Shown: positions 9,776-39,957 of the stretch, in pieces
How the letters are laid out: every line of letters begins with the position of its first letter
How positions within the stretch are numbered: the first letter of the stretch is position 1
NCBI RefSeq assembly: GCF_964204865.1
Contig: NC_135261.1
Span: forward strand, 18,600,001 to 18,664,000
Direction: 5' to 3'
Length of the DNA stretch: 64,000 bases
Source of the DNA: Styela clava
Lineage: Eukaryota
The notes under the pieces: model-generated
What the model saw: only the letters and a program-made list of their open reading frames with translations
What the model was told of the DNA's origin: nothing
Database searches by the model: none
Position numbers and translations under genes: made by a program

Positions 9776-9811
9776 TATAAATTAGGTCACTTGTGCACAC
9801 TTGGCATCAGT
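9776..9811 (+). promoter_or_regulatory. Core promoter of A1: TATA box, TGCACAC, TCAGT initiator
   Basis: TATAAAT at 9776, TGCACAC at 9794-9800 and TCAGT at 9807-9811; the same spacing is conserved before all four paralogs. Confidence 0.7.
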
Positions 9812-9953
9812 GAGTGAAAGACAGTGAAAAAGCCGTCATTGACTTCGTGAATCGTACTTCCAATGAAATTTCTTGGTTGAAAATTTGAAAAAAAAACTCT
9901 GTTTTTCGAATGCAATTTTAAAAATAAACTCTTAAATCCAATATTCTGACACA

Positions 9954-12431
9954 ATGAAGATACTGGTTGTTTTGTGTTGTTTCGTAGTTGCAGGTAAGAT
10001 AAAAGTTTTCATAATTACACTATCTGTTTTAAATTTGATAAGCATTATCAAAATTATCGAGACTATAATAATATTCAAATATTCCCATAATTCAAACAAT
10101 CAAAAGCTTATAACCTAAAAACTTCAGTATTAGTGTTTTTTCAATCTTATTGAAACAACAAACAGATAATTAAAGATTTTGAATTTTGTTCATTTCCAGC
10201 CGTGATGGCTGACACCATTTATGCTGCCCCTTGGATATTACAAACGAGTATATTAAATTTCGCACAAGGTTGAATCAACAGAAAATGTTAATGATTATAT
10301 TCTTCTCAGTATCTTCATATGGGGGAGAGAGGAGACAATATTTTCAGTGGGGAAGCGGAAACAAAGGTATTTACTTTTTGTTTAGTTTATCAAGAAAGGT
10401 AAGTCAACATAAAAATTGATGCTTCTACATTAGTGATTTCTATACAAAATTTCTATCTGTTCAAAAACAACAATCATGCTCTTTAAATGAATTGATAACA
10501 CGATAATGACACTGAATATATTTTTCAAAAGATAACTTTGGACCAAAATCATTTGGAGACGGCCTTAGACGTAGAACAAACGGATGGAGAACAAGTAAAC
10601 CAGTTTTGTTTATGCGTAAACGTCTACAAGAAAGAACAAAATTTGCACCAGAAATACCAATACCCTATCGACCAAGTCTGTTTAAACGTTCTCCTCCAGG
10701 CATTATGATCAAAAAACAGGATACACCTGAACCATTGTGGCAGCGAGCTCTAAAAATTCTCTTCAACATAAATAGCAACAAATACCGGCCGAGACCATTT
10801 GGTATTCCGGGGGATGATGATAAAAGTAGACTTGGACAACTTTGGCGCCGAGTGGATGTTGTTAGAAATCGACCCGGGCCATTTGGACGTCGAGGAGATG
10901 GAGGCAGACTAGGGCCTTTTAGGCGACAAGGAGATGACGATGGTTATGAACCTGGACCTTTTCAACGTAGAGAATATGGTGATAGAGGTGGACTTGGACC
11001 TTTCGGGCGTAGAGGAATTGTGAATAGACTGGGACCTTTCGGGCGTGGAGGAGTTGTGAATAGACCTAAACCTTTCGGGCGTAGAGGAGATAATGATGGA
11101 GATAGACCTCGACCTTTTTGGAGCAGAGGTGATAATGGTAAAGATAGACCTAGACCTTTCGGACGTAGAGGAGATTATGTCGGAGATAAACCTAGACCTT
11201 TTTGGAGTAGAGGAGATAATGATGGAAATAGACCTGGGACTTTCTGGAGTAGAAAAATTAGTGACGAAGACAGGCTTGAACCTTTTGGACGACGAGAACA
11301 TGGTGATGGTGATAGACCTAGATCTTTTTGGAGTATAAGAGATAAGGATGGAGATAGACCAGTACCTTTTGGACGTGGAGGAGATAATGGTAGGGATAGA
11401 CCTGGACCTTTCGGACGTCGAGAAGATGGAAATAGGCCAGGGCCTTTTGGACGCCGAAGAGATGGCGATGAAGATAGACCTGGACTTTTTAGGCGTAGAG
11501 GAGATGGTGGTAGAGATAAACCTGAAAAATTCAATTTTGATGATAATTCCAGAAAGTTTAAAGAATGCAATAAACAATGTGAATCATTAGACGAATGTTT
11601 CGGCAAAAAAGACTTTAAAAAAATTATGATGATTGCTCCTAAACCTTGCAAGACATGTGTGATGAAAGAATGTGAATTTAAAACGAGTAAGTGTATATTT
11701 ATTCTATAATTTTCTTTTAGCAAAATGTCCAACTCAGATTTTATAAATAAACGAGGCGAAACATTGATTTTTACCAGATTTGAAATGCTTTTTCTGTTTT
11801 TTCACATGAAGCATATTATTGTTAATTCAATTTTTCGCGATCAAAATCTATTGATCTAAAATTTACTGCTGTTTCATAAAGTCAGATTGTGATAGGTTAT
11901 ATTCATTATATTTTTTTAGATCGTCAATGCTTTGTGGATTCCCATGCAACGTGCAGTGACATCTGCCCGAAAATATCACCTGATAAAGTCAAGGATAAAA
12001 TTTCCTCATGTGCATCATGTATCAATAAATGCGAAGCGGAAGGTATTTTTTTATATTTATTTCTTTTATCACCTGATGTTGCAATTGTCGAAGAAGCTTG
12101 ACCAAAGATGAGAGATTTGAATCTTTTACAGAAATATGAAAGTTTAATCATTCAAGCCATCATAACCAACTAAAACTACTCTAAATATGACATTATTTTA
12201 ATTGGAACAACTTTTTATAAAGATGACAACCAGAAAACTAAGGATGACAGTGAAGGCTACGAAGAAAACGGCACAAATGGAGTCGATGATGACGTGGAAA
12301 GCGAAGATCATGGCGATGCCCACGATGACGGAGCTGAGGCAGACAACGAAGATTGGCCAGAAAAGGAAGATGATAATGATGAGATAACCCCTGAGATGAT
12401 TTTGGCAATATTCAATAAGTTGCTATCCTAA
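9954..12431 (+). CDS. Gene A1: intact secreted RPGPF/RGD-repeat, Cys-rich (vanabin-like), acidic-tail protein, ~527 aa
   Basis: Exons 9954-9993, 10310-10366, 10532-11686, 11920-12042, 12223-12431, all GT-AG and phase 1, join in frame. Signal peptide MKILVVLCCFVVAVSSYG; repeat array; 12 Cys across exons 3-4; Asp/Glu tail; AATAAA at ~12444. Confidence 0.88.
10870..11525 (+). repeat. Coding 42-bp (14-aa) minisatellite in A1 exon 3
   Basis: Repeating AGACCT(G/A)GACCTTT(C/T)(G/T)GG..GTAGAGGAGAT units, translated RPxPF(G/W)(R/S)RGD. Confidence 0.9.
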
Positions 12432-13402
12432 CTTTTTGTCGAAAATAAAATAAAAAATTGTACACCCTGGAATATACATTCTGGAATTTCTTTTTCGCCA
12501 AATTTGACTTATGTGCCTGTTAGAAAATAGCTTATATAAATAAAATTTTGTTATGTTAGAGGTATTAAAAATGTACTGTTTGATAAATTAAACATATAAA
12601 TGTGTGAGTAATAAATTCATCAACTAAATAGAATTGTCGTAATATAATTCGCCTAATTCAATGTCGCATGATGAAAATGAAAAGTTTAGAAGAGGGATAA
12701 CAGACTCGAAAAAGTTTTATATAGACGCTTGGTATCAGTTAGATATGTACAAAATGTAGTTTTAGCAACATGTTTTGAGCCTTCAATTTGAGTTGTTTAC
12801 GTTGACTGCTCAGAAAAATGTTTTTCGCATTTCGTTATGTTTTCCATAGCCTTCTGTTCAGAGCAACAAATCGCCTTTCTTTTTATTCTCTTACACGAAG
12901 TATACGTATACATCGTTTGGGTTTTATGCCATTGTTGTTGTTAGAATTCTTTTTCTTGTTGTTCTTATGAAAAAATTGGTTTTCTCTTTATTTACTAGAC
13001 CAACTGCTTTAAAATTCATTTTCATTGCGTAAAAATTGGATTGGTCGTTAGAAGGCAATTACCATTTTTTATTCTTTAAAAACTTCCTGGAGGCTCTATG
13101 GGATCATATCAATAATATAAATACGACTCCAAGCCAATATCTCCTTTGTTTGTGGTGCGTAGCAGTTAAGGACAAATAGTTTGTATTGCCACCTTAGCTG
13201 GGCGTGAAAGTTAGCAGGAAAATTTATGCTTATCGTATACCCAGCTTTTGATAATCACATCACATAGCACACAGTTTTTTAGATCCTCGAATCTAAATTA
13301 CTGTATTTTTGTATTACAACCCTATCTTATGTATTCATGTAATTGTGTCCCGATTAAAAGTAGTGTCGAATTATGCAAGATGATTGCTGGATTAGCTTTG
13401 TT

Positions 13403-13582
13403 CCGTGCGGAGATTCAGCCGGTTTGTACCGGTTCTATAGAACCGTCTCACGGAATTTTTTGAGATCAGCGAACCGGTTGGAATTGCTGGTGATTGTCAA
13501 TGACTTTTTGTAACAGAACCGGCTGAAAAAATATGACTTTTGTGATAGAACCGGTTGACAAAAGATTTGAATCCCACCACTG
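13403..13582. mobile_element. hAT-type MITE
   Basis: Right end GAATCCCACCACTG, degenerate left end CCGTGCGGAGATTCA, internal ACCGGTT repeats, 8-bp flanks GCTTTGTT/GCTTTGCT. Confidence 0.6.
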
Positions 13583-17800: not shown

Positions 17801-18130
17801 TGCTAACAAAATGGCGACGCTATATCATTTCAATAACATTTTTCAAATATATCAGACAAATAAAATTTCAAACCGCTAAATGTACTACTTAGTTTAAATT
17901 TAGCTATTCTTTGTTATTGGTTAGTTTGATAACTCTCGAATATTCAAACACAAAACGAGATAAATAAAGCTGACCTTGATGTAAAAAGAACCATCCTGAC
18001 GTCATCGTGATAACATTTAGGACCAAGTTTTTCAACGTGAACACAAACTAATATAAATTCTACGAAATGTATTGATATAAATGAAAAGAAAAAATACATT
18101 TATTTTGGGCAACAAAACAAGTGTTGATTT
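14830..18130 (+). repeat. Degenerate tandem array (3 units) upstream of gene B1
   Basis: The same markers occur at ~14905, 15945 and 16785; perfect TGACGTCA at ~15801, 16634 and 17997. Confidence 0.85.
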
Positions 18131-18132
18131 AG

Positions 18133-18168
18133 TATAAATTAGGTCACTTGTGCACACTTGTTATCAGT
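18133..18168 (+). promoter_or_regulatory. Core promoter of B1
   Basis: TATAAAT at 18133, TGCACAC at 18151, TCAGT at 18164. Confidence 0.7.
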
Positions 18169-18299
18169 TGATAAACGACAGTGAAAAAGCGATTGTACTC
18201 AATTGTTAAATCGTATTTTTATTGATTTGCTCGGTTGAAAAAAAACTCGTATGTCGACAGCTATTTGTGATAAACTCAAAAATACAATATTCTGAAATA

Positions 18300-21200
18300 A
18301 TGAAGATACTGGCTGCTTTGTGCTGTTTCGTGGTCGTAGGTAAGATAAATTTTTAAATAAGTTATCATATTGTTTTAAATATAATAAGCAAAATTCAAAT
18401 TCATACGACTATAACGACTATATAAATATCCAAATATTCCAATAATTCAAAGAATCAAAAGCTCATTACTTAAAAAGTTTAGTATTAGTGTCATGCCTTT
18501 CCAATTTTAAAAAAAGAATCCTATTGAAAATGCAGTTGATTAAGGATTTTGAGTTTTGTACATGGCTAGTTCCAACAAGTATAATAGAAAACTTTAATAT
18601 TTATCTTCTTCTCAGTATCTTCATATGGTGGAGAGAGGAGACAATATACTCAATTGGGAATAGGAAACAGAGGTATTTACTTTTGTGTTTTATTTGTCAG
18701 AAATAGTAACGAAAGAAAAGGAATTCAACATAATAATTAATGCTTCTTTATCAGCGATTTCTGTACCAAATTTCTATTGGTTCAAAAACAACAATCATAT
18801 TCTTGACGTGGAATTGATTACATGATAATGACGCTAAATATATTTGTTCAAAAGATAACGTTGGACCAAAATCATTTGGATACGGCCTTAGACGAGAAGC
18901 ATACGGATGGAGAACAAGTAAACCAGTTTTGTTCATGCGTAAACGTATACAAGAAAGAGCAAGATCCGCACCGAAAATACCAATCCCCTATCGACCAAAT
19001 CTGTTTAAACGTTCTCCCCCAGGCATTATGATCAAAAAACAGGATAAACCATAACCAATATGGCAGCGAGCTGTAAAAATTCTTTTCGGCATGAATAGCA
19101 ACAAATACCGACCGAGACCATTTGGTATTCCTGGGAATGATGACAAAAGTAGACTTGGACCATTTTGGCGCCGAGTAGATGTTGATAGAAAACCCTGGCC
19201 ATTTGGACGTCGTGGAGATGAAGGCAGACTAGGGCCTTTTAGGCGACCAGGAGATGGCGATGGTGATAGACCTGGACCCCTTCGACGTAGAGAATATGGT
19301 GATAGAGATAGACCTGGATCTTTCTGGCGTAGAGGAGATGGTGATAAAAATGGACCTGGACCTTCCGGGCGTAGAAGAGATGATGATGGAAATAGACCTG
19401 GACCTTTCGGTGGTAGAGGAGATGGTGATGGAAATAGACCTGGACCTTTCGGGCGTATAGGAGATGGTGATAGAAATAGACCTGGACCTTTCGGGCGTAT
19501 AGGAGATGGTGATAGAAATAGACCTGGACCTTTCGGGCGTATAGGAGATGGTGATAGAAATAGACCTGGACCTTTCGGGCGTAAAGGAGATGGTGATGGA
19601 AATAGACCTGGACCTTTCGGGCGTATAGGAGATAGTGATAGAAATAGACCTGGACCTTTCGGGCGTATAGGAGATGGTGATAGAAATAGACCTGGACCTT
19701 TCGGGCGTATAGGAGATGGTGATGGAAATAGACCTGGACCTTTCGGGCGTATAGGAGATGGTGATAGAAATAGACCCGGACCTTTCGGGCGTATAGGAGA
19801 TGGTGATAGAAATAGACCCGGATCTTTCGGGCGTATAGGAGATGGTGATGAAAATAGACCTGGACCTTTCGGGCGTAGAGAAGATGATGATGGAAATAGA
19901 CCTGGACCTTTCGGGCGTAGAGGAGATAATGATGGAAATAGACCTGGACCTTTCGGGCGTAGAGAAGATGATGATGGAAATAGACCTGGACCTTTCGGGC
20001 GTAGAGGAGATGATGATGGAAATAGACCTGGACCTTTCGGGCGTAGAGGAGATGATGATAGAAATAGACCTGGACCTTACGGGAGTAGAGGAGATGATGA
20101 TGGAAATAGACCTGGACCTTTCGGACGTAGAGGAGATGATGATGGAGATAGACCTGGACCTTTCGGTCGTAGAGGAGATGGCGATGGAAATAGACCTGGA
20201 CCTTTCGGTCGTAGAGGAGATGGTGATGGAAATAGACCTGGACCTTTCGGTCGTAGAGGAGATGATGATGGAGATAGACCCGGACCTTTCGGTCGTAGAG
20301 GAGATGATGATGGAGATAGACCTGAACTTTTTGGGCGTAGAGGAGGTGGTGATGGAAATAGACCTGGACCTTTCGGTCGTAGAGGAAATGGTGATGGAAA
20401 TAGACCTGGACCTTTTGGACGAAGAGAAGATGGTGCTAGACCTGGATCTTTTGGACGTAGTGGAGATGGTGATGGAGGTAGACCTGGACCTTTTGGACGT
20501 AGTGGAGATGGTGATGGAGATAGAACTGGATCTTTTGGACGTAGAGGAAGTGGTGACAGAGATAGACCTGATATTTCCGGGCGTAGAGGATATGGTGATA
20601 GATATAGACCTGGACCTTTTAGGCCCAGAGGGGATGATGATGGAAAGAACTTTGGAAACATTATGATGAGAATTCTGAAAGTGATACATAAAACCTTCGG
20701 AAAAAAAGAAAATGTTGAAGAAACAAATAACAAAAAATGCAAAAAGCAATGTGAAGCAAAGGAAAATTGCTTTGGAAGAAAAGATTTTGAAAAAATGATG
20801 ATGCTGTCGCCCAAACATTGCAAAGCATGCATGATGAAAGAATGCCAATTTAATATGGGTATAATTTTTTATCACAAACTTGAATATTTTTATATTTCAA
20901 TACTATGCTGAAACTTCTTTCACTTTAGAATCAAACTTAAATAATAAGTTAGAGAATACTTGTTTATTGAATATAAAACTCATCAGTAAGTTTCAAATAA
21001 TCGGTTCCAATTTCGGTATGACTTCCGTAATGTTGTGTATGCCAAACAAAATGTTAACAACGTTAATGTTCTATTTTTTCATATGTTCCAGATCGTAAAT
21101 GTTTCATGGATGCTCACAAGAAATGTGACAACATTTGCCCAGTATTATCACAAGAGAAAGTCGAGAATAAAACGTCCTTTTGTAAAACATGCATTGAAAA

Positions 21201-22007
21201 ATGTGAAGCAGAAAGTAAGTAATTGGTTGTAATATTCTTTTTTCTATTATAATAGAATGAATAACACATTCAACTTATTTGCCGTTTTACAATTTTATAG
21301 CAGGAAATATAATTCTTTTTGCATATTTAATCAAATTGTGAGTTTGAACAGATCTAATTCATTTCTATTTTCAGTTAATAAGAAACAAGAAAACTGTCTA
21401 ACTTTTTTTAAGTAGGCTATTCACGAGGAATACGTAAATTATCAAATTTCTTCACCAGAGTTCAATGTCCATGAAATATATATGTTATTTATAACCCTAA
21501 ATGCAAATGTACCATGTAACCTCTTTCAGAAGTGGTACATATAAAATACATCACCGAAAAATCCAGAACTTGTAGAAATTATAAATTAAGCATAACCAAT
21601 TGAACGTACTTTGGATATTGCGGTTGGCAAAAATTGTTCAGATTCATAACGATAAAATGTTTACTTTGTTTATGCAATCCTGAGCAGACGAACTTACCTA
21701 TGGCAATGACGGAAAAGCATTTGTTTATATAATAAATAGGTATAAAAATATGTAATGATCCCATATTAACAAAATTATTTTGTGCAAAGAGGTCAATGAA
21801 GACGATGATGACATGCCGGAGGATGAAGATACAATCGACGATATCTCAAAAAAGGAAGATCTAGAAGATGATAGCCATGATGGAAATGATGAAACCGCAA
21901 GTGAAATAGAAGTTAGCGATGAAGATGAAGTTGGAAATGATGAGATGACTTCTGATGATATAATGTCAACTACGGGTGGTGATATGGCATCGGATTCTGA
22001 TGAATAA
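18300..22007 (+). pseudogene. Gene B1: paralog with premature stop in exon 3
   Basis: Exons 18300-18339, 18616-18672, 18855-20858, 21092-21214, 21790-22007. In-frame TAA at 19052-19054 where B2 has GAA; the rest of the frame is open. Confidence 0.82.
19180..20645 (+). repeat. Coding 42-bp minisatellite in B1 exon 3
   Basis: Over 30 units of GGAGATGxTGATGGAAATAGACCTGGACCTTTCGGxCGTA(G/T)A; a 5' block of nine units reads GRI instead of GRR. Confidence 0.92.
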
Positions 22008-26980: not shown

Positions 26981-26981
26981 G

Positions 26982-27017
26982 TATAAATTAGATCACTTGT
27001 GCACACTTAGCATCAGT
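26982..27017 (+). promoter_or_regulatory. Core promoter of A2
   Basis: TATAAAT at 26982, TGCACAC at 27000, TCAGT at 27013. Confidence 0.7.
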
Positions 27018-27154
27018 TGGAGAACAGCGAAAAAGCGGTTAACCAATTCGTAAATCGTATTTTCAAAGAAATTTCTTTGTTGAACATTTGAAAAAAAACT
27101 CTGTTTATCGAATGTAATTTTGTGATAAACTCTAAAATCCAATATTCTGATGCA

Positions 27155-29970
27155 ATGAAGATACTGGTTGTTTTGTGTTGTTTCGTAGTTGCAGGTAAGA
27201 TAAATGTTTCAATAGGTTTTCATAATTAAACTATCAGTTTTAAATTTGATGAGCAATATCAAAAGTATCGCGACTATATAAATATTCAAATATTCCCATA
27301 ATTCAAACAATCAAAAGCTTACAACCTAAAAACTTCAATATTAGTGTCTTTTCAATCGTATTGAAACAACAGATAATTAAAGATTTTGAATTTTGTACAT
27401 GTCCAGCCGTGATGGCTGACAACATTTATGCTGCCCCTTGGATATTACAAACGAGTATATTGAATTTCGCATAAGGTAGAATCAACAGAAAATGTTAATG
27501 ATCATATTCTTCTCAGTATCTTCATATGGGGGAGAGAGGAGACAATATACTCAGTGGGGAAGCGGGAACAAAGGTATTTACTTTTTTGTTTTGTTCATTG
27601 ATAATTCAACATAAAAATTGATGCTTCTACATTAGTGATTTCTATACAAAATTTCTATCTGTTCAAAAACAACAATCATACTCTTTACATGGAATTGATA
27701 ACATGATAATGACACTGAATATATTTTTCAAAAGGTTACTTCGGACCACAATCATTCGGAGACGGCCTTAGACGAGGAACATACGTATTGAGAACAAGTA
27801 AACCAGTTTTGTTTATGCGTAAACGTCTACAAGAAAGAACAAAATCCGCACCAAAAATACCAATACCCTATCGACCAAGTCTGTTTAAACGTTCTCCTCC
27901 AGGCATTATGATAAAAAAACAGGATACACCTGAACCATTGTGGCAGCGAGCTCTAAAAATTCTCTCCAACATAAATAGCAACAAATACCGGCCCAGACTG
28001 GTTTTCCGGGGGATGATGATAAAAGTAGACTTGGACCACTTTGGCGCCGAGTGGATGTTGTTAGAAATCGACCGGGCCCATTCGGACGTCGAGGAGATGG
28101 AGGCAGACTAGGGCCTTTTAGGCGACAAGGAGATGGCGATGGTGTTAAACCTGGACCTTTTCAACGTAGAGAATATGGTGATAGAGATAGACTTGGACCT
28201 TTCGGGCGTAGAGGAGTTGTGAATAGACTTGGACCTTTCGGGCGTGGAGGAGATGGTGATGGAAATAGACCTGGACTTTTCGGGCGTAGAGGAGTTGTGA
28301 ATAGACTTGGACCTTTCGGGCGTGGAGGAGATGATGATGGAAATAGACCTAAACCTTTCGGGCGTAGAGGAGATAATGATGGAGATAGACCTCGACCTTT
28401 TTGGACCAGAGGTGATAATGGTAAAGATAGACCTAGACCTTTCGGACGTAGAGGAGATAATGACGGAGATAAACCTGGTCCTTTTTGGAGTAGAGGTGAT
28501 AATGATGAAGATCGACCTGGACTCTTCGGACGTCGAGGAGATAAGTATAGAAATAGACCTGGACCTTTCTGGCGTAGAGGATATAATGATAGAAATACAC
28601 CTGGACATTTCGAACGTCGAGTAGATAATGATGGAGATACCTCTGGACCTTTCTGGAGTAGAAAAAATATTGACGGAGACAGGCCTGAACGTTTTGGACG
28701 TCGAGGGGATGATGATGGAGGTAGTCCTAAACCTTTTTGGAGTAGAGGAGATAATGATGGAAATGGGCCTGGGACTTTCTGGAGTAGAAAAGATAATGAC
28801 GAAGACAGCCCTGAACCTTTTGGACGTCGAGAACATGGTGATGGTGATAGACCTAGACCTTTTTGGAGTATAAGAGATAAGGATGGAGATAGACCAGTAG
28901 TACCTTTTGGACGTGGAGGAGATAATGATATGGATAAACCTGGACCTTTCGGACGTCGAGAAGATGGAAATAGGCCAGGGCCTTTTAGACGCCGAAGAGA
29001 TGGCGATGAAGATAGACCTGGACCTTTCAGGCGTAGAGGAGATAGTGGTAGAGATAAACCTGAAAAATTCAACTTTGATGATAATTCCACAAAGTTTAAA
29101 GAATGCAATAAAAAATGTGAATCATTAGACGAATGTTTCGGCAAAAAAGACTTCGAAAAAATGATGATGATTGCTCCTAAACCTTGCAAGAAATGTGTGA
29201 TGAAAGAATGTGGATTCAAAATGAGTAAGTGTATATTTATTCTATAATTTTCTATTAGCAAAATGTCCAACTCAGATTTTATAAATAAACGAGGCGAAAC
29301 ATTGATTTTTACCAGATTTGAAATGCTTTTTCTGTTTTTTCACATGAAGCATATTATTGTTAATTCAATTTTTCGCGATCAAAATCTATTGATCTAAAAT
29401 TTACTGCTGTTTCATAAATTCAGATTGTGATAGGTTATATTCATTATCTTTTTTTTAGATCGTCAATGCTTTGTGGATTCCCATGCAACGTGCAGTGACA
29501 TCTGCCCGAAAATATCACCTGATAAAGTCAAGGATAAAATTTCCTCATGTGCATCATGTATCAATAAATGCGAAGCGGAAGGTATTTTTTTATATTTATT
29601 TCTTTTATCACCTGATGTTGCAATTGTCGAAGAAGCTTGACCCAAGATGAGAGATTTGAATCTTTTATAGAAATATGAAAGTTTAATCATTCAAGCCATC
29701 ATAACCAACCAAAACTACTCTAAATATGACATTATTTTAATTGGAACAACTTTTTATAAAGATGACAACCAGAAAACTAAGGATGACAGTGAAGGTTACG
29801 GAGAAATCGACACAAATGGAGTCGATGATGACGTGGAAAGCGAAGATCATGGCGATGCCCACGGTGATGGAGCTGAGGCAGACAACGATGATTGGCCAGA
29901 AAAGGAAGATGATAATGATGGGATAACCCCTGAGATGATTTTGTCGATATTCAATAAGTTGCTATCCTAA
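27155..29970 (+). pseudogene. Gene A2: paralog with frameshift in exon 3
   Basis: Exons 27155-27194, 27517-27573, 27735-29224, 29459-29581, 29762-29970. A 4-nt deletion near 27998 (AGACTGGTTTT vs A1 AGACCATTTGGTATT) shifts the frame to a stop at 28109-28111. Confidence 0.82.
28065..29062 (+). repeat. Coding 42-bp minisatellite in A2 exon 3, longer than in A1
   Basis: Same unit family as A1 with roughly eight additional units. Confidence 0.9.
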
Positions 29971-30695: not shown

Positions 30696-30925
30696 GCTCC
30701 CGAAGTATGCAAACCAAGATGGCGGACATCGGAATGTATTATGTGTACTAGGTTAGGGTTAGGCCATAATTTTAGGTATAAATACTACGGGAGGCTCTTG
30801 GCTAGTCTTCGAACTGATAATAGAACTAAAATAAGAGAAATTGAAATAAAATTATCGCCTAACCCTAACCTGTTACCCATGTTACGTTCCGATGTCCGCC
30901 ATCTTGGTTCGCCTACTTCGGGAGC
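30696..30925. mobile_element. Foldback MITE present only in duplication unit 2
   Basis: ~43-bp TIR GCTCCCGAAGTATGCAAACCAAGATGGCGGACATCGGAA / TTCCGATGTCCGCCATCTTGGTTCGCCTACTTCGGGAGC, inner inverted GGTTAGGGTTAGG/CCTAACCCTAACC; absent at the paralogous site ~13148. Confidence 0.85.
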
Positions 30926-31169
30926 GTAGCATTTAAGGACAAATAGTTTGTATTGCCACCTTAGCTGGGCGTGAAAGTTAGCAGGAAAATTTATGCTTAC
31001 CGTATACCCAGTTTTTGATAATCACATCACATAGTACACAGTTTTTTAGATCCTCGAATCAAAATTACGTTATTTTTGTGTTACAACCCTATCTTATGTA
31101 TTTATGTAATTGTGTCCCGATTAAAAGTAGTGTCGAATTATGCAAGATAATCGCTGGATTAGCCTTGTT

Positions 31170-31349
31170 CCGTGGGGAGAATCAGCCCGTATGTACCGGT
31201 TCTATAGAACCGTCTCACGGAATTTTTTGAGATCAGCGAACCGGTTAGCATTGCTGGTGATTGTCAATGACTTTTTGTAACAGAACCGGCTGAAAAAATA
31301 TGACTTTTGTGATAGAACCGGTTGACAAAAGATTTGAATCCCACCACTG
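31170..31349. mobile_element. hAT-type MITE (duplicate of 13403-13582)
   Basis: Near-identical to the unit-1 copy, so it was copied together with its flanks. Confidence 0.6.
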
Positions 31350-32639: not shown

Positions 32640-35600
32640 AAATCCCATACCAGAAGTGCAAATTGAAGAAAGTCGGCAATTTAATTAATAAGCACCGTGC
32701 TATTTTGGTCCAACCATCACGTGAGTCGATGACGATTTGAACAGATTATGACGTTATAGAAAACGCGGGAGATTTGAATTCGTTTCCAGCATACGGGCGT
32801 ACTATCCGCAGTTTATTTATACCCTATCATGAGAGTGTCGTTTTAAAAACCAAAACAAGGATTCGAATAAATTGAAGCTAAAGATATTTTATTTATAGAT
32901 AGCTCTTTTCAATCAAATATTGTGGGTCTATTTTAGGACATTTTAGCGTGGGTTTTGGTGCAAATTTCTAACTAGCATTTCAACTATATATTTTTGGAGT
33001 GTATTTCTTATTGGTTAATTCAAACTTTCAAATTTCGTTTCGTGTATAATTTATTATGATTTCACACGAGATATCTATAGTGGACTTAATGGCAAGCGAA
33101 TACGACTATTGCTAAAATTAGTATAGTGACAGCGTTGTATTAATTAGTCGAATAAACGAAAGTCAACGCCATACTTATTTTTAAAATATGTTTTAACATT
33201 ACTAAGGTTATCACACACCATTTTCGATCACCTATACTCATTTCATCGATCCGACACCATTGCAGGTCTGCCATAAATTAGACAAACAACAGAATTGTTC
33301 GACTATACTGAGAAACCCCGACATCGTATTCAAGAGGTCATTGGTAACATATAATAAATGTAAACAAAAAGTGCGTGCATGTTATTTTTGTACACTCATT
33401 TACGGTTTTTATTTACGAAACTCTAGCAAACGTTATTGTATAAAGTTTACTAATTGGTTCCTTCAGTATGACTCCTAAACATTGCACGCAATGTTAACAA
33501 AATATTCTTATTGGTTAGTTTGATAACCCTCGAATATTCAATCACGACGAAATAACTTGAACTAATCTTGATTAGCTCGGAGACGCGTTTACAACTAAAT
33601 GGAACCATCTTGACGTCAAATAATATTTTATACCAGGTTTTAAATTTAAACACAATCTTATAGTCTGGGAAACGTATTTTTATAAATGAAAAAAAAAATA
33701 CATAAGTAAGTCGAGAATTTAAATATTGTGCACCGTGATATTTTAGATCAACACCAGTGAGTCGACGATGATATGAACGGATCATGAAGTAAATAAAAAC
33801 ATGGGAGATTTAAATTCGTTTGCAGCATACAGGCGTACGACCCTCAGTTTAATTTTGGCTTTTTATCAGAATTTCATTTTGAAAACCAAAACAAAGAGTC
33901 GAATCAATTAGGCTAAGGCTATTCTATTTATGGATAGTTATTTTCGATCAAATAGGTGGGTCTATTTTAAGACATATTACCGGCGTGTTTTTGTGAATAT
34001 TTCTGACTAGCATTTCAGCTATATATTTTTGGAGTGGTATAGTGACTATACTGAGAAACTCTGACACCGTATTCAGGGGGTCATTGATAAAATATAATAA
34101 TATAATAAAGGTAAACAAAAATGTACGTACATGTTATTTTTGTACACTTTTACGCTTTTCTTTGCGAAACTCTATCAAAAGTTATTTTTAAAAGTTCTCT
34201 GATTGGCTCTTTTGGGATGAGTAATTAACAAAATGGCGGTGCTTTATTTCAACATCTTTTTCTAAATATATCAGACAAACAGGATAAAAATTTCAATCCA
34301 TTAAATTTATTACTTAGTTTACAAAGCTAAATTTAGCCATTATTATTGGTTAGGTTGATAACCTTCGAATATTCAAACACAAAACAAGATAATTTGAGCT
34401 AATCTTGATCAGCTTGGAGATGTGTTTGAATATAGATCCATCTTGACGTCATGGAAATATTTAATATCAAGTTTCGAATGTAAACACAGCATCAAAACAA
34501 GAGTTGATTTACTACACTGGAATTCACTACCGAAACTGCATATTGAAGTAACTCGACAATTTAATTATGATGAACCCTCATATTTCGGTCCAAAATCACA
34601 TGAGTCGATGTCGATATGAGCAGCGGATCATGACGTAAATAAAAGCGCGGAAGATTTAAATTCGTTTGCAGCATACAGGCGTTCTACCCGTAGTTTAATT
34701 ATAGTTTATATCATAGTATAGTTTAAAAATCAAAACAAGAATGCGAAGTAATTAAAGTTATTCTATTCATAGATAGTTGTTTATAATCAAATGTGCTGTC
34801 TTATTTAAGACATATTAGTGGCGTATTAGTATCGGTGAATTTCTGTAGCTAGGATTTTAATGATCTAATTTTGGATTGATGTTTCCTATTGGTGAAATCA
34901 AACTTTAAATTTTTTTCCCTTGTATAGGATCGCTATAAAAGATATCAACGTTGTATTCATGAGTAAAATATTTATTTTAAAATAAAATGTATCATTACTA
35001 AGATTATCACACACCATTTTTAATAAGTATATCTGGTTATATATCATATGTACTGCAAATCATATTTACAGTCATGTATATTTCACCATCGTGATCGCAA
35101 AAAATGTGATTCGGATTTTTATATATGCATGCAAATTTAATTGTGACCACCAGGCCATGTAAAATGAACAAAACAAAAATGAATTACTAAGTACAAATGA
35201 AGCCAGGGTAAACACAAGTGAAATTTTGGATAAAATATCACCTTCGACGACCAAAAAACTATAAAAGCAATAGCAGTGTAGCGGCCTTTCCCATCTTCAA
35301 GAACGGGAAACCTGAAGTAATTAGGTAGACAAGAAAACGATTAATTTCACATAAAAGGTGACAAAAAATTTGATATTCATATTGGCTTCAAAAAACTGGG
35401 TGGACACTCATTTAAATTTATTGACCCGACACCATTGCCTTAAATCAGACAAACAACAGAATTTGTTCGACGCTATTGAGAAACCCTGACATTGTATTCA
35501 AAAAACATTCGTAAGATATAATAAAGTAAACAAAAAGTGCGTACATGCTATTTTGGTACACTCTGACGCTTTTCTTTACGAAACTCTAGCTAAAGTTATT

Positions 35601-35960
35601 TTAAAAAGTTTTCTCATTAGCTCTTTCATTATGACAATGCTCACAAAATGGCGACGCTATATCATTTCAATAACATTTTTCAAATATATCAGACAAATAA
35701 AATTTTAAACCGCTAAATGTACTACTTAGTTTAAATTTAGCTATTCTTTGTTATTGGTTAGTTTGATAACTCTCGAATATTCAAACACAAAACGAGATAA
35801 TTAAAGCTGACCTTGATGTAAATAGAACCATCCTGACGTCATCGTGATAACATTTAAGTTTTTCAACGTGAACACAAACTAATATAAATTCTACGAAATG
35901 TATTGATATAAATGAAAAAAAAAAATACATTTATTTTGGGCAACAAAACAAGTGTTGATT
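32640..35960 (+). repeat. Degenerate tandem array (3 units) upstream of gene B2
   Basis: Near-identical to 14830-18130; markers at ~32717, 33755 and 34597. Confidence 0.85.
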
Positions 35961-35963
35961 TAG

Positions 35964-35999
35964 TATAAATTAGGTCACTTGTGCACACTTGTCATCAGT
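35964..35999 (+). promoter_or_regulatory. Core promoter of B2
   Basis: TATAAAT at 35964, TGCACAC at 35982, TCAGT at 35995. Confidence 0.7.
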
Positions 36000-36129
36000 T
36001 GATAAACGACAGTGAAAAAGCGATTACTCAATTGTTAAATCGTATTTTTATTGATTTGCTCGGTTGAAAAAAAAAGTCGTTTGTCGACAGCTATTTGTGA
36101 TAAACTCAAAAATACAATATTCTGAAATA

Positions 36130-39100
36130 ATGAAGATACTGGCTGCTTTGTGCTGTTTCGTGGTCGTAGGTAAGATAAATTTTTAAATAAGTTATCATAT
36201 TGTTTTAAATATAATAAGCAAAATTCAAATTCAATAATTCAAAGAATCAAAAGCTCATTACTTAAAAAGTTTAGTATTAGTGTCATGCCTTTCCAATTTT
36301 AAAAAAAGAATCCTATTGAAAATGCAGTTGATTAAGGATTTTGAGTTTTGTACATGGCTAGTTCCAACAAGTATAATAGAAAACTTTAATATTTATCTTC
36401 TTCTCAGTATCTTCATATGGTGGAGAGAGGAGACAATATACTCAATTGGGAATAGGAAACAGAGGTATTTACTTTTGTGTTTTATTTGTCAAAAATAGTA
36501 ACGAAAGAAAAGGAATTCAACATAATAATTAATGCTTCTTTATCAGCGATTTCTGTAACCAAATTTCTATTTGTTCAAAAACAACAATCATATTCTTGAC
36601 GTGGAATTGATTACATGATAATGACGCTAAATATATTTGTTCAAAAGGTAACGTTGGACCAAAATCATTTGGATACGGCCTTAGACGAGAAGCATACGGA
36701 TGGAGAACAAGTAAACCAGTTTTGTTCATGCGTAAACGTCTACAAGAAAAAGCAAGATCCGCACCGAAAATACCAATCCCCTATCGACCAAATCTGTTTA
36801 AACGTTCTCCCCCAGGCATTATGATCAAAAAACAGGATAAACCAGAACCACTATGGCAGCGAGCTGTAAAAATTCTTTTCGGCATAAATAGCAACAAATA
36901 CCGGCCGAGACCATTTGGTATTCCGGGGAATGATGACAAAAGTAGACTTGGACCATTTTGGCGCCGAGTAGATGTTGATAGAAAACCCGGGCCATTTGGA
37001 CGTCGTGGAGGTGATGGCAGACTAGGGCCTTTTAGGCGACCAGGAGATGGCGATGGTGATAGACCTGGACCTCTTCGACGTAGAGAATATGGTGATAGAG
37101 ATAGACCTGGATCTTTCTGGCGTAGAGGAGATGGTGATAAAAATGGACCTGGACCTTCCGGGCGTAGAAGAGATGATGATGGAAATAGACCTGGACCTTT
37201 CGGTGGTAGGAGAGATGGTGATGGAAATAGACCTAAACCTTTCGGGCGTATAGGAGATGGTGATAGAAATAGACCTGGACCTTTCGGGCGTATAGGAGAT
37301 GGTGATGGAAATAGACCTGGACCTTTCGGGCGTATAGGAGATGGTGATAGAAATAGACCCCGACCTTTCGGTGATGGAAATAGACCTGGACCTTTCGGAC
37401 GTAGAGGAGATGGCGATGGAAATAGACCTGGACCTTTCGGTCGTAGAAGAGATGATGATAGAAATAGACCTGGACCTTTCGGGCGTAGAGGAGATGATGA
37501 TGGAAATAGACCTGGACCTTTCGGTCGTAGAGGAGATGGCGATGGAAATAGACCTGGACCTTTCGGTCGTAGAGGAGATGATGATGGAAATAGACCTGGA
37601 CCTTTCGGACGTAGAGGAGATGATGATGGAGATAGACCTGGACCTTTCGGTCGTAGAGGAGATGGCGATGGAAATAGACCTGAACCTTTCGGTCGTAGAG
37701 GAGATGGTGATGGAAATAGACCTGGACCTTTCGGTCGTAGAGGAGATGATGATGGAGATAGACCTGGACTTTTTGGGCGTAGAGGAGATAGTGATGAAAA
37801 TAGACCTGGACCTTTCGGTCGTAGAGGAGATGATGATGGAGATAGACCTGGACTTTTTGGGCGTAGAGGAGATGATGATAGAAATAGACCTGGACCTTTC
37901 GGACGTAGAGGAGATGATGATGGAGATAGACCTGGACCTTTCGGTCGTAGAGGAGATGGCGATGGAAATAGACCTGGACCTTTCGGTCGTAGAGGAGATG
38001 ATGATGGAAATAGACCTGGACCTTTCGGACGTAGAGGAGATGATGATGGAGATAGACCTGGACCTTTCGGTCGTAGAGGAGATGGCGATGGAAATAGACC
38101 TGGACCTTTCGGTCGTAGAGGAGATGGTGATGGAAATAGACCTGGACCTTTCGGTCGTAGAGGAGATGATGATGGAGATAGACCTGGACTTTTTGGGCGT
38201 AGAGGAGATGGTGATGAAAATAGACCTGGACCTTTCGGTCGTAGAGGAGATGATGATGGAGATAGACCTGGACTTTTTGGGCGTAGAGGAGATGGTGATG
38301 GAAATAGACCTGGACCTTTCGGTCGTAGAGGAAATGGTGATGGAAATAGACCTGGACCTTTTGGACGTAGAGAAGATGGTGCTAGACCTGGATCTTTTGG
38401 ACGTAGTGGAGATGGTGATGGAGGTAGACCTGGACCTTTTGGACGTAGTGAAGATGGTGATGGAGATAGAACTGGATCTTTTGGACGTAGAAGAAGTGGT
38501 GACAGAGATAGACCTGATATTTCCGGGCGTAGAGGATATGGTGATAGATATAGACCTGGACCTTTTAGGCCCAGAGGAGATGATGATGGAAAGAACTTTG
38601 GAAACATTATGATGAGAATTCTGAAAGTGATACATAAAACCTTCGGAAAAAAAGAAAATGATATAGAAACAAATAACAAAAAATGCAAAAAGCAATGTGA
38701 AGCAAAGGAAAAATGCTTTGGAAGAAAAGATTTTGAAAAAATGATGATGCTGTCGACCAAACATTGCAAAGCATGCATGATGAAAGAATGCCAATTTAAT
38801 ATGGGTATATATAATTTTTTATCACAAACTTGAATATTTTTATTTTTCAATACTATGCTAGAACTTCTTTTACTTTAAAGTCAAACTTAAATAATAAGTT
38901 AGAGAATACTTGTTTATTGAATATAAAACTCACCAGTAAGTTTCAAATAATCGGTTCCAATTTCGGTATGAATTCCGTAATGTTGTGTATTCCAAACAAA
39001 ATGTTAACAACGTTAATGTTCTATTTTTTCATATGTTCCAGATCGTAAATGTTTCATGGATGCTCACAAGAAATGTGACAACATTTGCCCAGTATTATCA

Positions 39101-39957
39101 CAAGAGAAAGTCGAGAATAAAACGTCATCTTGTAAAACATGCATTGAAAAATGTGAAGCAGAAAGTAAGTAATTGGTTGTAATATTCTTTTTTCTATCAT
39201 AATAGAATGAATAACACATTCAACTTATTTGCCGTTTTACAATTTTATAGCAGGAAATATAATTCTTTTTGCATATTTAATCAAATTGTGAGTTTGAACA
39301 GATCTAATTCATTTCTATTTTCAGTTAATAAGAAACAAGAAAACTGTCCAACTTTTTTTAAGTAGGCTATTCACGAGGAATACGTAAATCATCAAATTTC
39401 TTCACCAGAGTTCAATGTCCATGAAATATATATGTTATTTATAACCCTAAATGCAAATGTCCCATGTGATCTCTTCCAGAAGTGGTACATATAAAATACA
39501 TCACCGAAAAATCCCGAACTGGTGGAAATTATAAATTAAGCATAACCAATTTAACGTACTTTGGATATTGCGGTTGGCAAAAATTGTTCAGATTCATAAC
39601 GATAAAATATTTACTTTGTTTATGCAATCCTGAGCAGACGAACTTACCTATGACAATGACGGAAAAGCATTTGTTTATATAATGAATAGGTATAAAAATA
39701 TGTAATGATCCCATAGTAACAAAATTATTTTGTGCAAAGAGGTCGATGAAGACGATGATGACATGCCGGAGGATGAAAATACAATCGACGATATCTTAGA
39801 AAAGGAAGATCTAGAAGATGATAGCCATGATGGAAATGATGAAACCGCAAGTGAAATAGAAGTTAGCGATGAAGATGAAGTTGGAAATGATGAGATGACT
39901 TCTGATGATATAATGTCAACTACGGGTGGTGATATGGCATCGGATTCTGATGAATAA
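36130..39957 (+). CDS. Gene B2: intact secreted RPGPF/RGD-repeat, Cys-rich (vanabin-like), acidic-tail protein, ~864 aa
   Basis: Exons 36130-36169, 36408-36464, 36648-38804, 39042-39164, 39740-39957, all GT-AG and phase 1, in frame. Signal MKILAALCCFVVVVSSYG; ~23 RGD motifs by hand count; 12 Cys; acidic C-terminus; AATAAA at ~40079. Confidence 0.88.
36975..38590 (+). repeat. Coding 42-bp minisatellite in B2 exon 3 with internal 420-bp higher-order duplication
   Basis: About 38 units; 37501-37880 is almost identical to 37921-38300. Confidence 0.92.

What the first reader, a model, noticed from the sequence alone, without database searches (positions are those of the whole stretch)
9954..39957. 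Candidate undescribed system: four-gene cluster of secreted polyproteins joining a variable peptide/RGD array to a vanabin-like Cys domain and an acidic tail
Seen: four co-oriented five-exon paralogs of two types (A, B), each with signal peptide, basic pro-region, variable 14-aa repeat array, 12-Cys domain and Asp/Glu tail; repeat number and variants differ in every copy. Known: signal + cationic peptide + anionic C-terminal tail is the layout of ascidian haemocyte defence-peptide precursors (clavanin, styelin); clustered, repeat-variable, Gly/Arg-rich RGD-bearing secreted proteins recall sea-urchin SpTransformer (Sp185/333), by analogy only. I know no named family with this combination. Inference: an inducible, fast-diversifying effector for defence, wound plugging, adhesion or metal handling.
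Basis: partly seen in the sequence, partly recalled or inferred. Interest (0 to 1): 0.92.

Follow-up and report, generated by a model that had tools for sequence, protein, structure and literature searches.

The report
Orphan sea-squirt secreted repeat-polyprotein gene cluster
A sea-squirt genome carries a tandem cluster of genes, with no relatives found anywhere, that encode secreted proteins made of dozens of copies of a 14-residue unit followed by a 12-cysteine domain and an acidic tail. They are most likely precursors cut into many small amidated peptides, but no RNA or peptide evidence could be obtained.

Summary

**Structure**
- The window holds four co-oriented genes: A1, B1, A2 and B2.
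- Each has a conserved TATA box, a signal-peptide exon, GT-AG introns all in phase 1, a stop codon and poly(A) signals.
- My model has four coding exons, not five.
- B1 carries a nonsense codon and A2 a 4-bp frameshift.
- The cluster runs past the window. Two more intact genes (A0, B0) and one broken inverted copy lie upstream, and there is no copy elsewhere in the 377-Mb genome.

**Host.** The genome is a tunicate: it has the fused cellulose synthase/GH6 gene.

**Protein**
- The order is signal peptide, basic Pro/Gly/Phe/Arg region, then an array of RPGPF-G-R-R-G-D-x-D-x-N/D units, about 15 to 37 per gene.
- A 12-Cys Lys/Met-rich helical domain and a polyanionic tail follow.
- All 12 Cys are invariant in six copies. 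dN/dS for A versus B is 0.11-0.14.

**Evolution.** The genes are mosaics. The 5' halves of A and B differ by about 0.19 substitutions per site. The 3' halves are saturated, and the junction lies at the array.

**Homology.** No homologue was found by Pfam, PDB, 1.84 billion representatives, three word-index searches or the Atlas. It is not a vanabin; true vanabin exons lie elsewhere in this genome.

**Reading.** Best reading (0.4): a convertase- and amidation-processed polyprotein. Main rival (0.3): an uncleaved disordered RGD matrix protein.

**Limits.** Earlier scan notes on this cluster all concern this same stretch, not other DNA.

The parts
9776..9781 (+). A1 TATA box (TATAAA) inside a conserved core-promoter block about 175 nt upstream of the ATG
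   Evidence: The same block is present upstream of all four genes.
9954..9993 (+). A1 exon 1: signal peptide MKILVVLCCFVVA, phase-1 GT donor
10532..11686 (+). A1 exon 2: basic pro-region, array, and the first six Cys of the domain
   Evidence: AG acceptor, GT donor, no stop codon.
10929..11524 (+). A1 42-nt array (14.6 copies, 69% matches). FGRR and FWSR units alternate.
11920..12042 (+). A1 exon 3 (123 nt, phase 1-1): second six Cys
12223..12431 (+). A1 exon 4: polyanionic tail and TAA stop; AATAAA at 12444
18133..18138 (+). B1 TATA box
18300..18339 (+). B1 exon 1: signal peptide MKILAALCCFVVV
18855..20858 (+). B1 exon 2: pro-region, array, cationic helix and Cys half 1; interrupted by one stop codon
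19052..19054 (+). B1 lesion: GAA to TAA nonsense codon in the pro-region
19249..20646 (+). B1 42-nt array (33.4 copies, 89% matches), including nine FGRI units
21092..21214 (+). B1 exon 3: Cys half 2
21790..22007 (+). B1 exon 4: acidic tail and stop
26982..26987 (+). A2 TATA box
27155..27194 (+). A2 exon 1: signal peptide
27735..29224 (+). A2 exon 2: frameshifted by a 4-bp deletion; the frame is open again from 28051
27998..27999 (+). A2 lesion: 4 bp (CATT in the other three copies) missing between these two bases
28138..29062 (+). A2 42-nt array (22.4 copies, 70% matches)
29459..29581 (+). A2 exon 3: Cys half 2
29762..29970 (+). A2 exon 4: acidic tail and stop
35964..35969 (+). B2 TATA box
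36130..36169 (+). B2 exon 1: signal peptide
36648..38804 (+). B2 exon 2: pro-region, array, cationic helix ending in GKK, and Cys half 1; intact
37042..38592 (+). B2 42-nt array (37.4 copies, 84% matches)
39042..39164 (+). B2 exon 3: Cys half 2
39740..39957 (+). B2 exon 4: acidic tail (net charge -33) and stop

Best explanation
**What it is.** The window holds four members of a gene family of six genes plus one fragment. The family is confined to one locus of a tunicate genome.

Each gene encodes a secreted modular polyprotein, in this order:
- a signal peptide;
- a basic Pro/Gly/Phe/Arg-rich stretch that grades into a tandem array of 14-residue units (RPGPF-G-R-R-G-D-x-D-x-N/D);
- a cationic, Lys/Met-rich, all-helical 12-Cys domain;
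- a polyanionic tail.

**How it most likely works (inferred).** The protein enters the regulated secretory pathway.
- Prohormone-convertase-type enzymes cut after the dibasic pairs.
- A carboxypeptidase removes the basic residues.
- The exposed Gly is converted to a C-terminal amide.

A B-type gene would then release two to three dozen copies of an 11-residue peptide, G-D-x-D-x-(N/D)-R-P-G-P-F-amide. Its C-terminal core is constant and its N-terminal half variable. A-type genes would give fewer and longer peptides, because every second unit reads FWSR instead of FGRR.

The cationic Cys domain would be a second product. The acidic tail would mask its charge until it is cleaved off, as in cationic-peptide/anionic-propiece precursors.

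**How the family evolves (shown).**
- Unit number changes by unequal crossing-over within the arrays.
- The arrays are also the junction at which a shared 5' module (promoter, signal peptide, pro-region, array) has been recombined onto two old 3' modules (A and B Cys domain plus tail).

**Shown versus inferred.** Shown: gene structure, repeat anatomy, Cys invariance, purifying selection, mosaic history, lack of homologues. Inferred: secretion, cleavage, amidation and any activity.
For: **Gene reality**
- A TATA block is conserved upstream of all four genes, and poly(A) signals follow the stops.
- Every intron is GT-AG and in phase 1 in every copy.
- The 12 Cys are invariant in six copies.
- For the Cys domain, A versus B gives dN/dS 0.11-0.14 with dS about 2.

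**Processing signature**
- In 72 B-type units, positions 1-7 (RPGPFGR) are nearly fixed: G6 in 68 of 72, R7 in 69 of 72, and R or K at position 8 in 56 of 72. Variation sits at positions 8, 11, 13 and 14.
- This is the neuropeptide-like pattern of a conserved C-terminal core plus cleavage and amidation sites, with a variable N-terminal half.
- B2 has 31 G-basic-basic sites and B0 has 29.
- In-silico cleavage of B2 gives 30 amidated peptides, 24 of them 11-mers. B0 gives 27, mostly 11- or 12-mers ending RPGPF.
- Dibasic sites in the pro-region (MRKR, FKR, IKK) are kept between A1, B1, B2 and B0.

**Charge layout.** Helix plus Cys half 1 carries +10 and the tail -33 in B2.

**Against a cross-linked matrix.** The arrays hold no Cys, no Lys, almost no Tyr and almost no Ser or Thr, so the usual cross-linking and glycosylation handles are missing.

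**Mosaic history**
- The 5' halves of A and B are 79-83% identical, introns included. Pro-region dS is 0.20.
- No nucleotide similarity remains 3' of the array.
Against:
- A-type arrays fit poorly. Position 6 is W in 21 of 45 units and G in 19, so predicted products are a heterogeneous set of 8- to 40-mers.
- B1 carries nine tandem FGRI units and B2 three. These lack the dibasic pair.
- R-G-D and the G-D-x-D part are about as conserved as the cleavage site. An uncleaved protein explains that equally well.
- An invariant C-F-G-(K/R)-K motif sits inside the folded Cys domain. So a Gly-dibasic motif alone does not prove cleavage.
- Arrays with 84-89% nucleotide identity between units, tandem gene copies and no homologue in any other species are more usual for structural, reproductive or immune secreted proteins than for neuropeptides.
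- The predicted peptide is roughly neutral, so it is not a typical cationic antimicrobial peptide.
- Recent duplicates show weak constraint: dN/dS is 0.59 for B1/B2 and 0.86 for A1/A2.
Confidence: 0.4

Rival explanations
1. Uncleaved, intrinsically disordered secreted matrix, adhesive or coacervate protein. The Gly/Pro/Arg/Asp/Phe array acts as a hydrated, elastomer-like polyampholyte spacer. It displays many RGD cell-attachment motifs and Asp-rich Ca-binding patches. The C-terminal Cys domain multimerises or anchors the protein, and the acidic tail binds cations. Possible sites of action are the tunic, a blood clot, the egg coat or the larval adhesive.
For: - RGD occurs 23 times in B2, 17 in B0 and 16 in A0, and it survives in both FGRR-GD and FWS-RGD units.
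- G9, D10 and D12 are as conserved as the cleavage site.
- B2 array composition is G 28%, R 22%, D 18%, P 13% and F 7%. By general knowledge of resilin- and elastin-type repeats, this lies in the Pro+Gly range of elastomeric disordered proteins.
- The layout of signal peptide, long homogenised array and C-terminal Cys module is that of many structural secreted proteins.
- Rapid change in copy number and taxonomic restriction.
Against: - The arrays lack Tyr, Lys, Cys, Ser and Thr, so they have no usual cross-linking or glycosylation chemistry.
- RGD is lost in FGRI, GRRE, GRRGY and GRRR units.
- The near-fixed Gly6-Arg7 in B units has no obvious structural reason.
Confidence: 0.3
2. Inducible immune effector of the SpTransformer (Sp185/333) type: a disordered, multitasking, RGD-bearing haemocyte protein. 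Its value lies in repeat and element diversity among clustered paralogues, and peptide release is not essential.
For: - Clustered paralogues whose arrays differ in number and variant in every copy.
- In B units, amino-acid diversity at positions 8, 11, 13 and 14 exceeds the diversity at most four-fold synonymous sites.
- Recombination shuffles modules between the A and B types.
- The cationic Cys domain plus anionic tail resembles host-defence precursors.
Against: - No sequence similarity to any SpTransformer or other protein.
- There is no His-rich region.
- Inducibility and haemocyte expression are untested.
- The diversity may simply reflect amplification of unit subtypes.
Confidence: 0.15
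3. Metal-handling protein whose 12-Cys, Lys/Met-rich domain is a divergent vanabin. It would bind vanadium or copper, with the Asp-rich array and tail as additional cation binders.
For: - The domain is Lys-rich and predicted all-helical, with CX3C-type spacings and three invariant Met.
- A 12-residue KCKKxC...C match to an own-genome vanabin exon.
Against: - PF11437 finds true vanabin exons on C17 and C112 but nothing in this cluster at E<=10.
- Pfam on the separate pieces gives no family at E<=1.
- PDB profile searches, which include solved vanabin, are blank at E<=10.
- The domain has 12 Cys, not 18.
- The BLASTP match is not significant.
Confidence: 0.05
4. A decaying or non-functional minisatellite-bearing locus. 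The open frames persist only because the repeats are young, and several copies are pseudogenes.
For: - B1 has a nonsense codon and A2 a frameshift.
- A degraded inverted copy lies upstream, next to a transposase-like ORF.
- Weak constraint between recent duplicates.
Against: - Four of six copies keep open long exons of 385-732 codons.
- Splice sites, the TATA block and all 12 Cys are conserved.
- dN/dS is 0.11-0.14 across a saturated A/B divergence.
Confidence: 0.05

Closest known systems
Multi-copy amidated neuropeptide or prohormone precursors (for example the FMRFamide precursor of Aplysia and cnidarian Antho-RFamide/LWamide precursors; from general knowledge)
   Same: A signal peptide followed by tens of tandem copies of a short peptide. 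Each copy ends in Gly plus a dibasic pair. The C-terminal core is constant and the stretch between cores is acidic or variable.
   Different: - No sequence relation.
- Here the gene is multi-copy and fast-evolving.
- A-type units lose the amidation and cleavage signal in alternation.
- A 12-Cys domain and a polyanionic tail follow the array.
- No peptide ending in PGPF-amide was found in the paper library.
Insect polypeptide immune-effector precursors (honeybee apidaecin multipeptide precursor, ant hymenoptaecin multipeptide precursor, Drosophila Baramicin; from general knowledge, the ant case listed)
   Same: Tandem units of dibasic site, acidic spacer and Pro/Arg-containing peptide. Unit number varies between alleles and paralogues. 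Several different products come from one precursor.
   Different: - The predicted repeat peptide here is roughly neutral and only 11 residues long, not a cationic Pro-rich antimicrobial peptide.
- No homology.
- An immune role is untested.
Ascidian haemocyte peptide precursors (clavanin, styelin; from general knowledge)
   Same: A signal peptide, a cationic part and a polyanionic C-terminal extension. B-type genes also carry a 17-residue cationic amphipathic stretch ending in Gly-Lys-Lys.
   Different: - Those precursors are small, carry a single peptide and are Cys-free.
- No sequence similarity was detected in any search.
Turgencins A and B of the ascidian Synoicum turgens (PMC7024374)
   Same: Lys-rich, Met-containing, six-Cys helix-loop-helix modules with C-x3-C near the N-terminus and C-x2-C-x3-C near the C-terminus. 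Each half of the 12-Cys domain has six Cys and predicted helices.
   Different: - Loops are twice as long: 16 and 14 residues between Cys3 and Cys4, against 7-8 in the turgencins.
- Half 2 starts with C-x7-C.
- The turgencin motifs CXMAC and KKXGG are absent.
- No conserved cleavage site lies between or after the halves, and no amidation signal.
- Homology is undetectable.
Vanabin-2 family (PF11437)
   Same: Lys-rich, disulphide-stapled helical domain in an ascidian.
   Different: - Fails the family model, while true vanabin exons in the same genome pass it.
- 12 Cys instead of 18.
- It is embedded in a long repeat protein.
Sea-urchin SpTransformer (Sp185/333)
   Same: Clustered, repeat-variable, Gly/Arg-rich, RGD-bearing secreted proteins restricted to one lineage.
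   Different: - No sequence relation.
- Regular 14-residue tandem units rather than element mosaics.
- A Cys domain and an acidic tail are present.
- No expression data.

Membership tests
Vanabin-2 (PF11437) | Match to the family profile above the 25-bit cut-off | tested here: not met
   - Pfam scan of the exon pieces gave no family at E<=1.
- A whole-genome six-frame search with PF11437 found four exons on C17 and C112 at 26-27 bits, but nothing in the C16 cluster at E<=10.
Vanabin-2 (PF11437) | 18 Cys forming nine disulphides in a four-helix bow | tested here: not met
   - 12 invariant Cys.
- Helices are predicted, but only at pLDDT 60-64, and each half was folded alone.
Vanabin-2 (PF11437) | Binds V(IV) | not testable with these tools
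   Needs recombinant protein and EPR or a binding assay.
Turgencin-type six-Cys helix-loop-helix peptides | Cys spacing C-x3-C-x4-C-x7/8-C-x2-C-x3-C with motifs CXMAC and KKXGG (PMC7024374) | tested here: not met
   - Half 1 is C-x3-C-x5-C-x16-C-x2-C-x4-C.
- Half 2 is C-x7-C-x3-C-x14-C-x2-C-x3-C.
- Both motifs are absent.
Turgencin-type six-Cys helix-loop-helix peptides | Free peptide of about 35 residues with an amidated C-terminus and C1-C6/C2-C5/C3-C4 bridges | not testable with these tools
   - There is no conserved dibasic site between the halves: RK in B, RQ in A.
- Disulphide pairing needs MS or NMR.
Amidated multi-copy peptide precursor (functional class, not a homology family) | N-terminal signal peptide | tested here: met
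   - A hydrophobic 13-residue start ending in small residues, on its own exon in all copies.
- Judged by inspection; no predictor was run.
Amidated multi-copy peptide precursor (functional class, not a homology family) | Repeated peptide bounded by dibasic sites, with Gly before the C-terminal site | tested here: met
   - Met for B type: G6 in 68 of 72 units, R7 in 69 of 72, R or K at position 8 in 56 of 72; 24 of the 30 peptides predicted for B2 are 11-mers.
- Only half met for A type: W replaces G in 21 of 45 units.
Amidated multi-copy peptide precursor (functional class, not a homology family) | Mature peptides detectable; expression in secretory, neuroendocrine or haemocyte cells | not testable with these tools
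SpTransformer (Sp185/333) | Sequence homology to the echinoid family | tested here: not met
   phmmer over 1.84 billion representatives returned only four unrelated repeat proteins.

The most novel reading that the evidence does not exclude
A tunicate-specific dual-state effector. As an intact protein, the array displays dozens of RGD motifs and acts as a cell-adhesive, Ca-binding matrix. Convertase cleavage between the two Arg and the Gly-Asp destroys every RGD at once and releases a burst of amidated xRPGPF peptides as signals. The acidic tail is removed at the same time, unmasking a cationic Cys-rich domain. Recombination within the arrays continually re-pairs one shared peptide-array module with two ancient C-terminal effector modules.
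Probability: 0.1. Interest if true: 0.8.

Novelty: new variant of a known kind. Interest (0 to 1): 0.55.

Why it matters
Tunicates are the closest invertebrate relatives of vertebrates, and their lineage-specific secreted effectors are poorly charted.

- **If peptides are released.** This family would add a new amidated peptide type (xRPGPF-amide), made in very high copy number. It would also add a new disulphide-rich cationic domain to the ascidian peptide repertoire. Both can be tested directly by peptidomics.
- **Whatever the function.** The locus shows clearly how coding minisatellites drive gene evolution. The arrays change length between duplicates that are about 5% diverged. They also serve as crossover points that swap a young 5' module onto old 3' modules.
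- **A limit of current catalogues.** The family escaped every protein database searched here.

Tried and rejected
**Homologue searches (all blank)**
- Word-index searches with A1 exon 2, with the B2 Cys region and with the unique N-terminal region of A0.
- phmmer of A1 exon 2 against 1.84 billion representatives gave four hits. All align repeat to repeat in unrelated proteins.
- Pfam gave no family for any exon piece.
- PDB profile searches of both Cys halves were blank at E<=10.
- The ESM Atlas gave no usable hit.

**Structure**
- AlphaFold2 of each Cys half alone, with six-row alignments, gave all-helical models at pLDDT 60 and 64.
- Foldseek against the PDB found nothing.
- The wide VIA-align search gave only generic three-helix matches at Z<5, which I disregard.

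**Tests of specific ideas**
- Internal duplication of the two Cys halves: hhalign probability 3%. Rejected.
- The A0 N-terminal amphipathic stretch as a relative of the B-type helix: no BLASTP alignment. Rejected.
- Vanabin relation: rejected.

**Literature.** The peptide strings PGPFamide, RPGPF, FGRRGD and others gave no relevant paper. Topic searches gave nothing specific.

The spliced model was never joined. All searches and folds were run exon by exon. The whole 12-Cys domain and the full-length proteins were therefore neither searched nor folded as one chain.

Full report
**1. What is in the sequence**

A self-comparison of the window shows a unit of about 17.8 kb holding one A gene and one B gene, present twice.
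- A1/B1 lie at about 9.9-22.0 kb and A2/B2 at about 27.1-40.0 kb.
- The intergenic DNA of the two units is 97-98% identical.

Tandem Repeats Finder reports period-42 arrays in the four long exons:

| Gene | Array | Copies | Matches |
|---|---|---|---|
| A1 | 10929-11524 | 14.6 | 69% |
| B1 | 19249-20646 | 33.4 | 89% |
| A2 | 28138-29062 | 22.4 | 70% |
| B2 | 37042-38592 | 37.4 | 84% |

The window has no N. The long reverse-strand and off-frame ORFs in the ORF list are by-products of the repeats.

**2. Gene models**

All four genes share the same signals.
- A conserved block with TATAAA lies about 175 nt upstream of the ATG (9776, 18133, 26982, 35964). Poly(A) signals lie 13-125 nt after the stop.
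- Exon 1 is 40 nt, encodes MKIL(V/A)(V/A)LCCFVV(A/V), and ends in a GT donor in phase 1.
- The next AG acceptor opens the long frame in phase 1 in every copy, including B0 and A0.

The long exon carries the basic pro-region, the array and the first six Cys. A 123-nt phase 1-1 exon carries the second six Cys. The last exon carries the acidic tail. Every boundary is GT/AG.

Coding exons in window coordinates:

| Gene | Exon 1 | Exon 2 | Exon 3 | Exon 4 |
|---|---|---|---|---|
| A1 | 9954-9993 | 10532-11686 | 11920-12042 | 12223-12431 |
| B1 | 18300-18339 | 18855-20858 | 21092-21214 | 21790-22007 |
| A2 | 27155-27194 | 27735-29224 | 29459-29581 | 29762-29970 |
| B2 | 36130-36169 | 36648-38804 | 39042-39164 | 39740-39957 |

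A1 sums to 508 codons and B2 to 845. Without RNA I cannot exclude a further small exon.

B1 has GAA changed to TAA at 19052-19054. A2 lacks 4 bp after 27998, where the other three copies read CATT. Each has that single lesion and is otherwise open. They are therefore young pseudogenes, polymorphisms or assembly errors.

**3. The cluster is larger than the window**

The window is G000:C16:18600001-18664000 in a 377-Mb assembly. Six-frame searches of the whole genome with the B2 Cys region and with the Cys-half-2 profile find seven places. All lie on C16 between 18.555 and 18.640 Mb, and nothing convincing lies elsewhere. I fetched the upstream 50 kb.
- **A0:** long exon of 732 codons, with its own signal-peptide exon MNLSLAVLCCLAVL in phase 1 and a different N-terminal region.
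- **B0:** 657 codons.
- **A degraded B-like copy** on the minus strand, beside a 593-codon transposase-like ORF.

**4. The host is a tunicate**

A cellulose-synthase (PF03552) exon lies at C9:16177457-16177855. A glycoside-hydrolase-6 (PF01341) exon lies 2 kb downstream on the same strand. By established knowledge, this GT2-GH6 fusion gene marks tunicates among animals. An earlier follow-up note (s1-817513) names the genome Styela clava. I did not test that.

**5. Repeat anatomy**

I collected 117 units of exactly 14 residues.

*B type (72 units).* Counts by position:
- R1 69, P2 68, G3 67, P4 61, F5 67, G6 68, R7 69.
- R8 53, with I 11, S 5 and K 3.
- G9 62, D10 64, D12 70.
- Position 11 is G or D. 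Position 13 is G, R, E or K. Position 14 is N or D.
- Gly6 uses four codons (GGG 27, GGT 26, GGA 13, GGC 2).

*A type (45 units).* Position 6 is W in 21 units and G in 19, and position 7 is R in 27 and S in 15. FGRR and FWSR units alternate, giving a 28-residue super-repeat. This agrees with note s1-810891.

RGD occurs 23 times in B2, 17 in B0, 16 in A0, 13 in B1, 9 in A2 and 6 in A1. G-basic-basic occurs 31, 29, 9, 20, 10 and 8 times in the same order.

The 'pro-region' is itself made of decayed xPxPF(G/W/S) units.

**6. In-silico processing**

I cut after dibasic pairs and read a C-terminal Gly as an amide donor.
- B2 gives 30 peptides. 24 are 11-mers, and G-D-G-D-G-N-R-P-G-P-F-amide occurs seven times.
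- B0 gives 27 peptides, mostly 11- or 12-mers.
- A1, A2 and A0 give only 8-10 heterogeneous peptides of 8-40 residues.

B genes also carry a 17-residue cationic amphipathic stretch ending in G-K-K, between the array and the Cys domain (note s1-810916).

Net charges:

| Part | Net charge |
|---|---|
| B2 array | +21 over 548 residues |
| B2 helix plus Cys half 1 | +10 |
| B2 Cys half 2 | +1 |
| B2 tail | -33 |
| A1 tail | -22 |

**7. The Cys domain**

All 12 Cys are invariant in six copies.
- Half 1 is C-x3-C-x5-C-x16-C-x2-C-x4-C and contains an invariant C-F-G-x-K-D-F motif and three invariant Met.
- Half 2 is C-x7-C-x3-C-x14-C-x2-C-x3-C.
- For A versus B, dN is 0.23-0.26 and dS about 2 or saturated, so dN/dS is 0.11-0.14. 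This is clear purifying selection.
- The two halves are not detectably related to each other.
- AlphaFold2 on each half alone predicts three helices at low confidence, pLDDT 60 and 64. Structure searches gave nothing usable.

The whole domain was therefore neither searched nor folded as one chain.

**8. Not a vanabin, and only turgencin-like in style**

The Vanabin-2 model finds four exons at 26-27 bits on C17 and on the small contig C112. It finds nothing in this cluster at E<=10. BLASTP of the Cys halves against one of those exons gives only a 12-residue K-C-K-K-x-C match at E 0.04.

Turgencins (PMC7024374) share three features with each half: Lys/Met richness, six Cys, and a helix-loop-helix with a C-x3-C start and a C-x2-C-x3-C end. 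Their loops are half as long, and their motifs CXMAC and KKXGG are absent here.

**9. No homologues**

| Search | Query | Result |
|---|---|---|
| Word-index, three runs | A1 exon 2; B2 Cys region; A0 N-terminal region | blank |
| phmmer, 1.84 billion representatives | A1 exon 2 | four unrelated repeat proteins |
| Pfam | exon pieces | no family |
| PDB profiles | both Cys halves | blank at E<=10 |
| ESM Atlas | both Cys halves | no usable hit |
| Papers | peptide strings | nothing relevant |

These databases may hold few tunicate proteins, so 'orphan' means 'none in what was searched'.

**10. Mosaic history**

- Between A and B, the promoter, exon 1, intron 1 and the pro-region are 79-83% identical. 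For the pro-region, dS is 0.20 and dN/dS is 0.45.
- Past the array no nucleotide similarity is left, and the Cys exons are saturated at synonymous sites. The arrays are therefore the junction at which a young 5' module has been placed on two old 3' modules. Unequal crossing-over or gene conversion between A and B arrays is the likely cause.
- The A0/B0 pair split from the others at dS of about 0.16-0.18. The A1B1/A2B2 duplication is at dS 0.03-0.06.
- Since that duplication the arrays have gained or lost whole units. dN/dS is 0.59 for B1/B2 and 0.86 for A1/A2.

**11. Interpretation**

The genes are real and are, or recently were, under selection. The near-fixed core RPGPF plus Gly-Arg-Arg, set against a variable N-terminal half, is the signature of a multi-copy amidated peptide precursor. 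That is my leading mechanism, at 0.4.

Against it stand six points:
- the A-type FWSR units;
- the FGRI units;
- the equal conservation of R-G-D and G-D-x-D;
- the young, homogenised arrays;
- the multi-copy, lineage-restricted nature of the family;
- the complete lack of expression or peptide data.

The main rival is an uncleaved disordered RGD and Ca-binding matrix or adhesion protein (0.3). Next come an SpTransformer-style immune protein (0.15), metal handling (0.05) and a decaying locus (0.05).

Note s1-810838 points out that cleavage between R-R and G-D would destroy the RGD. That idea links the first two readings, and I give it as the novel case.

**12. What could not be done**

**13. 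Verdict**

This is a genuine, previously uncatalogued tunicate gene family with a clear modular architecture and an instructive recombination history. Its function is unknown. I rate interest at 0.55 and novelty as a new variant of a known kind, namely secreted multi-copy repeat or peptide polyproteins.

Noticed in passing
L013:5161-9666 and L014:5832-9343 (G000:C16:18585161-18599343, upstream of the window): Two further intact-looking family members. A0 has a different signal peptide and a unique N-terminal region of about 240 residues. B0 has 15-residue unit variants. The 'four-gene cluster' is really six genes plus a fragment.
   Followed up: yes
L010:2077-7867 (G000:C16:18552077-18557867, minus strand): A degraded B-like copy with stop codons lies on the opposite strand, directly beside a 593-codon open frame that looks like a hAT/ZBED-type transposase (judged by eye).
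   Followed up: partly
window 8770-10136, 17126-18491, 26431-27348, 34988-36220; also 5493-8822: The 1.3 kb upstream of each gene is shared by A and B types at about 80% identity. Related segments of 0.6-1.3 kb recur several times between 5.5 and 8.8 kb and in the intergenic regions (14836-15427, 24275-25493, 32647-33237). The scan also noted this as s1-810886.
   Followed up: no
window 49604-50341 (-) and 53888-54690 (+): Exon-sized ORFs of glutathione-transferase type: a weak GST_N_2 match, and a C-P-W-A-H-R motif typical of Xi/omega-class GSTs. There appear to be two genes in divergent orientation downstream of the cluster.
   Followed up: partly
L020:1858-2091 and 8002-8247 (G000:C17:10366858-10373247); L021:325-558 and 8288-8521 (C112): True Vanabin-2-family exons in tandem about 6 kb apart on C17. 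A near-identical pair sits on the 22-kb contig C112, which is probably an uncollapsed haplotig.
   Followed up: partly
G000:C9:16177457-16180164 (L015): Cellulose-synthase GT2 and GH6 exons lie 2 kb apart on one strand. This is the tunicate CesA fusion gene and serves as a quick taxon marker for this genome.
   Followed up: yes
window 41292-42136: A local tandem duplication of about 170-nt offset (81% identity over about 680 nt), overlapping a 96-codon minus-strand ORF that has an internal repeat.
   Followed up: no
window 13500-13563 and 31267-31330: A 32-nt unit present twice in tandem at the same place downstream of both A genes.
   Followed up: no
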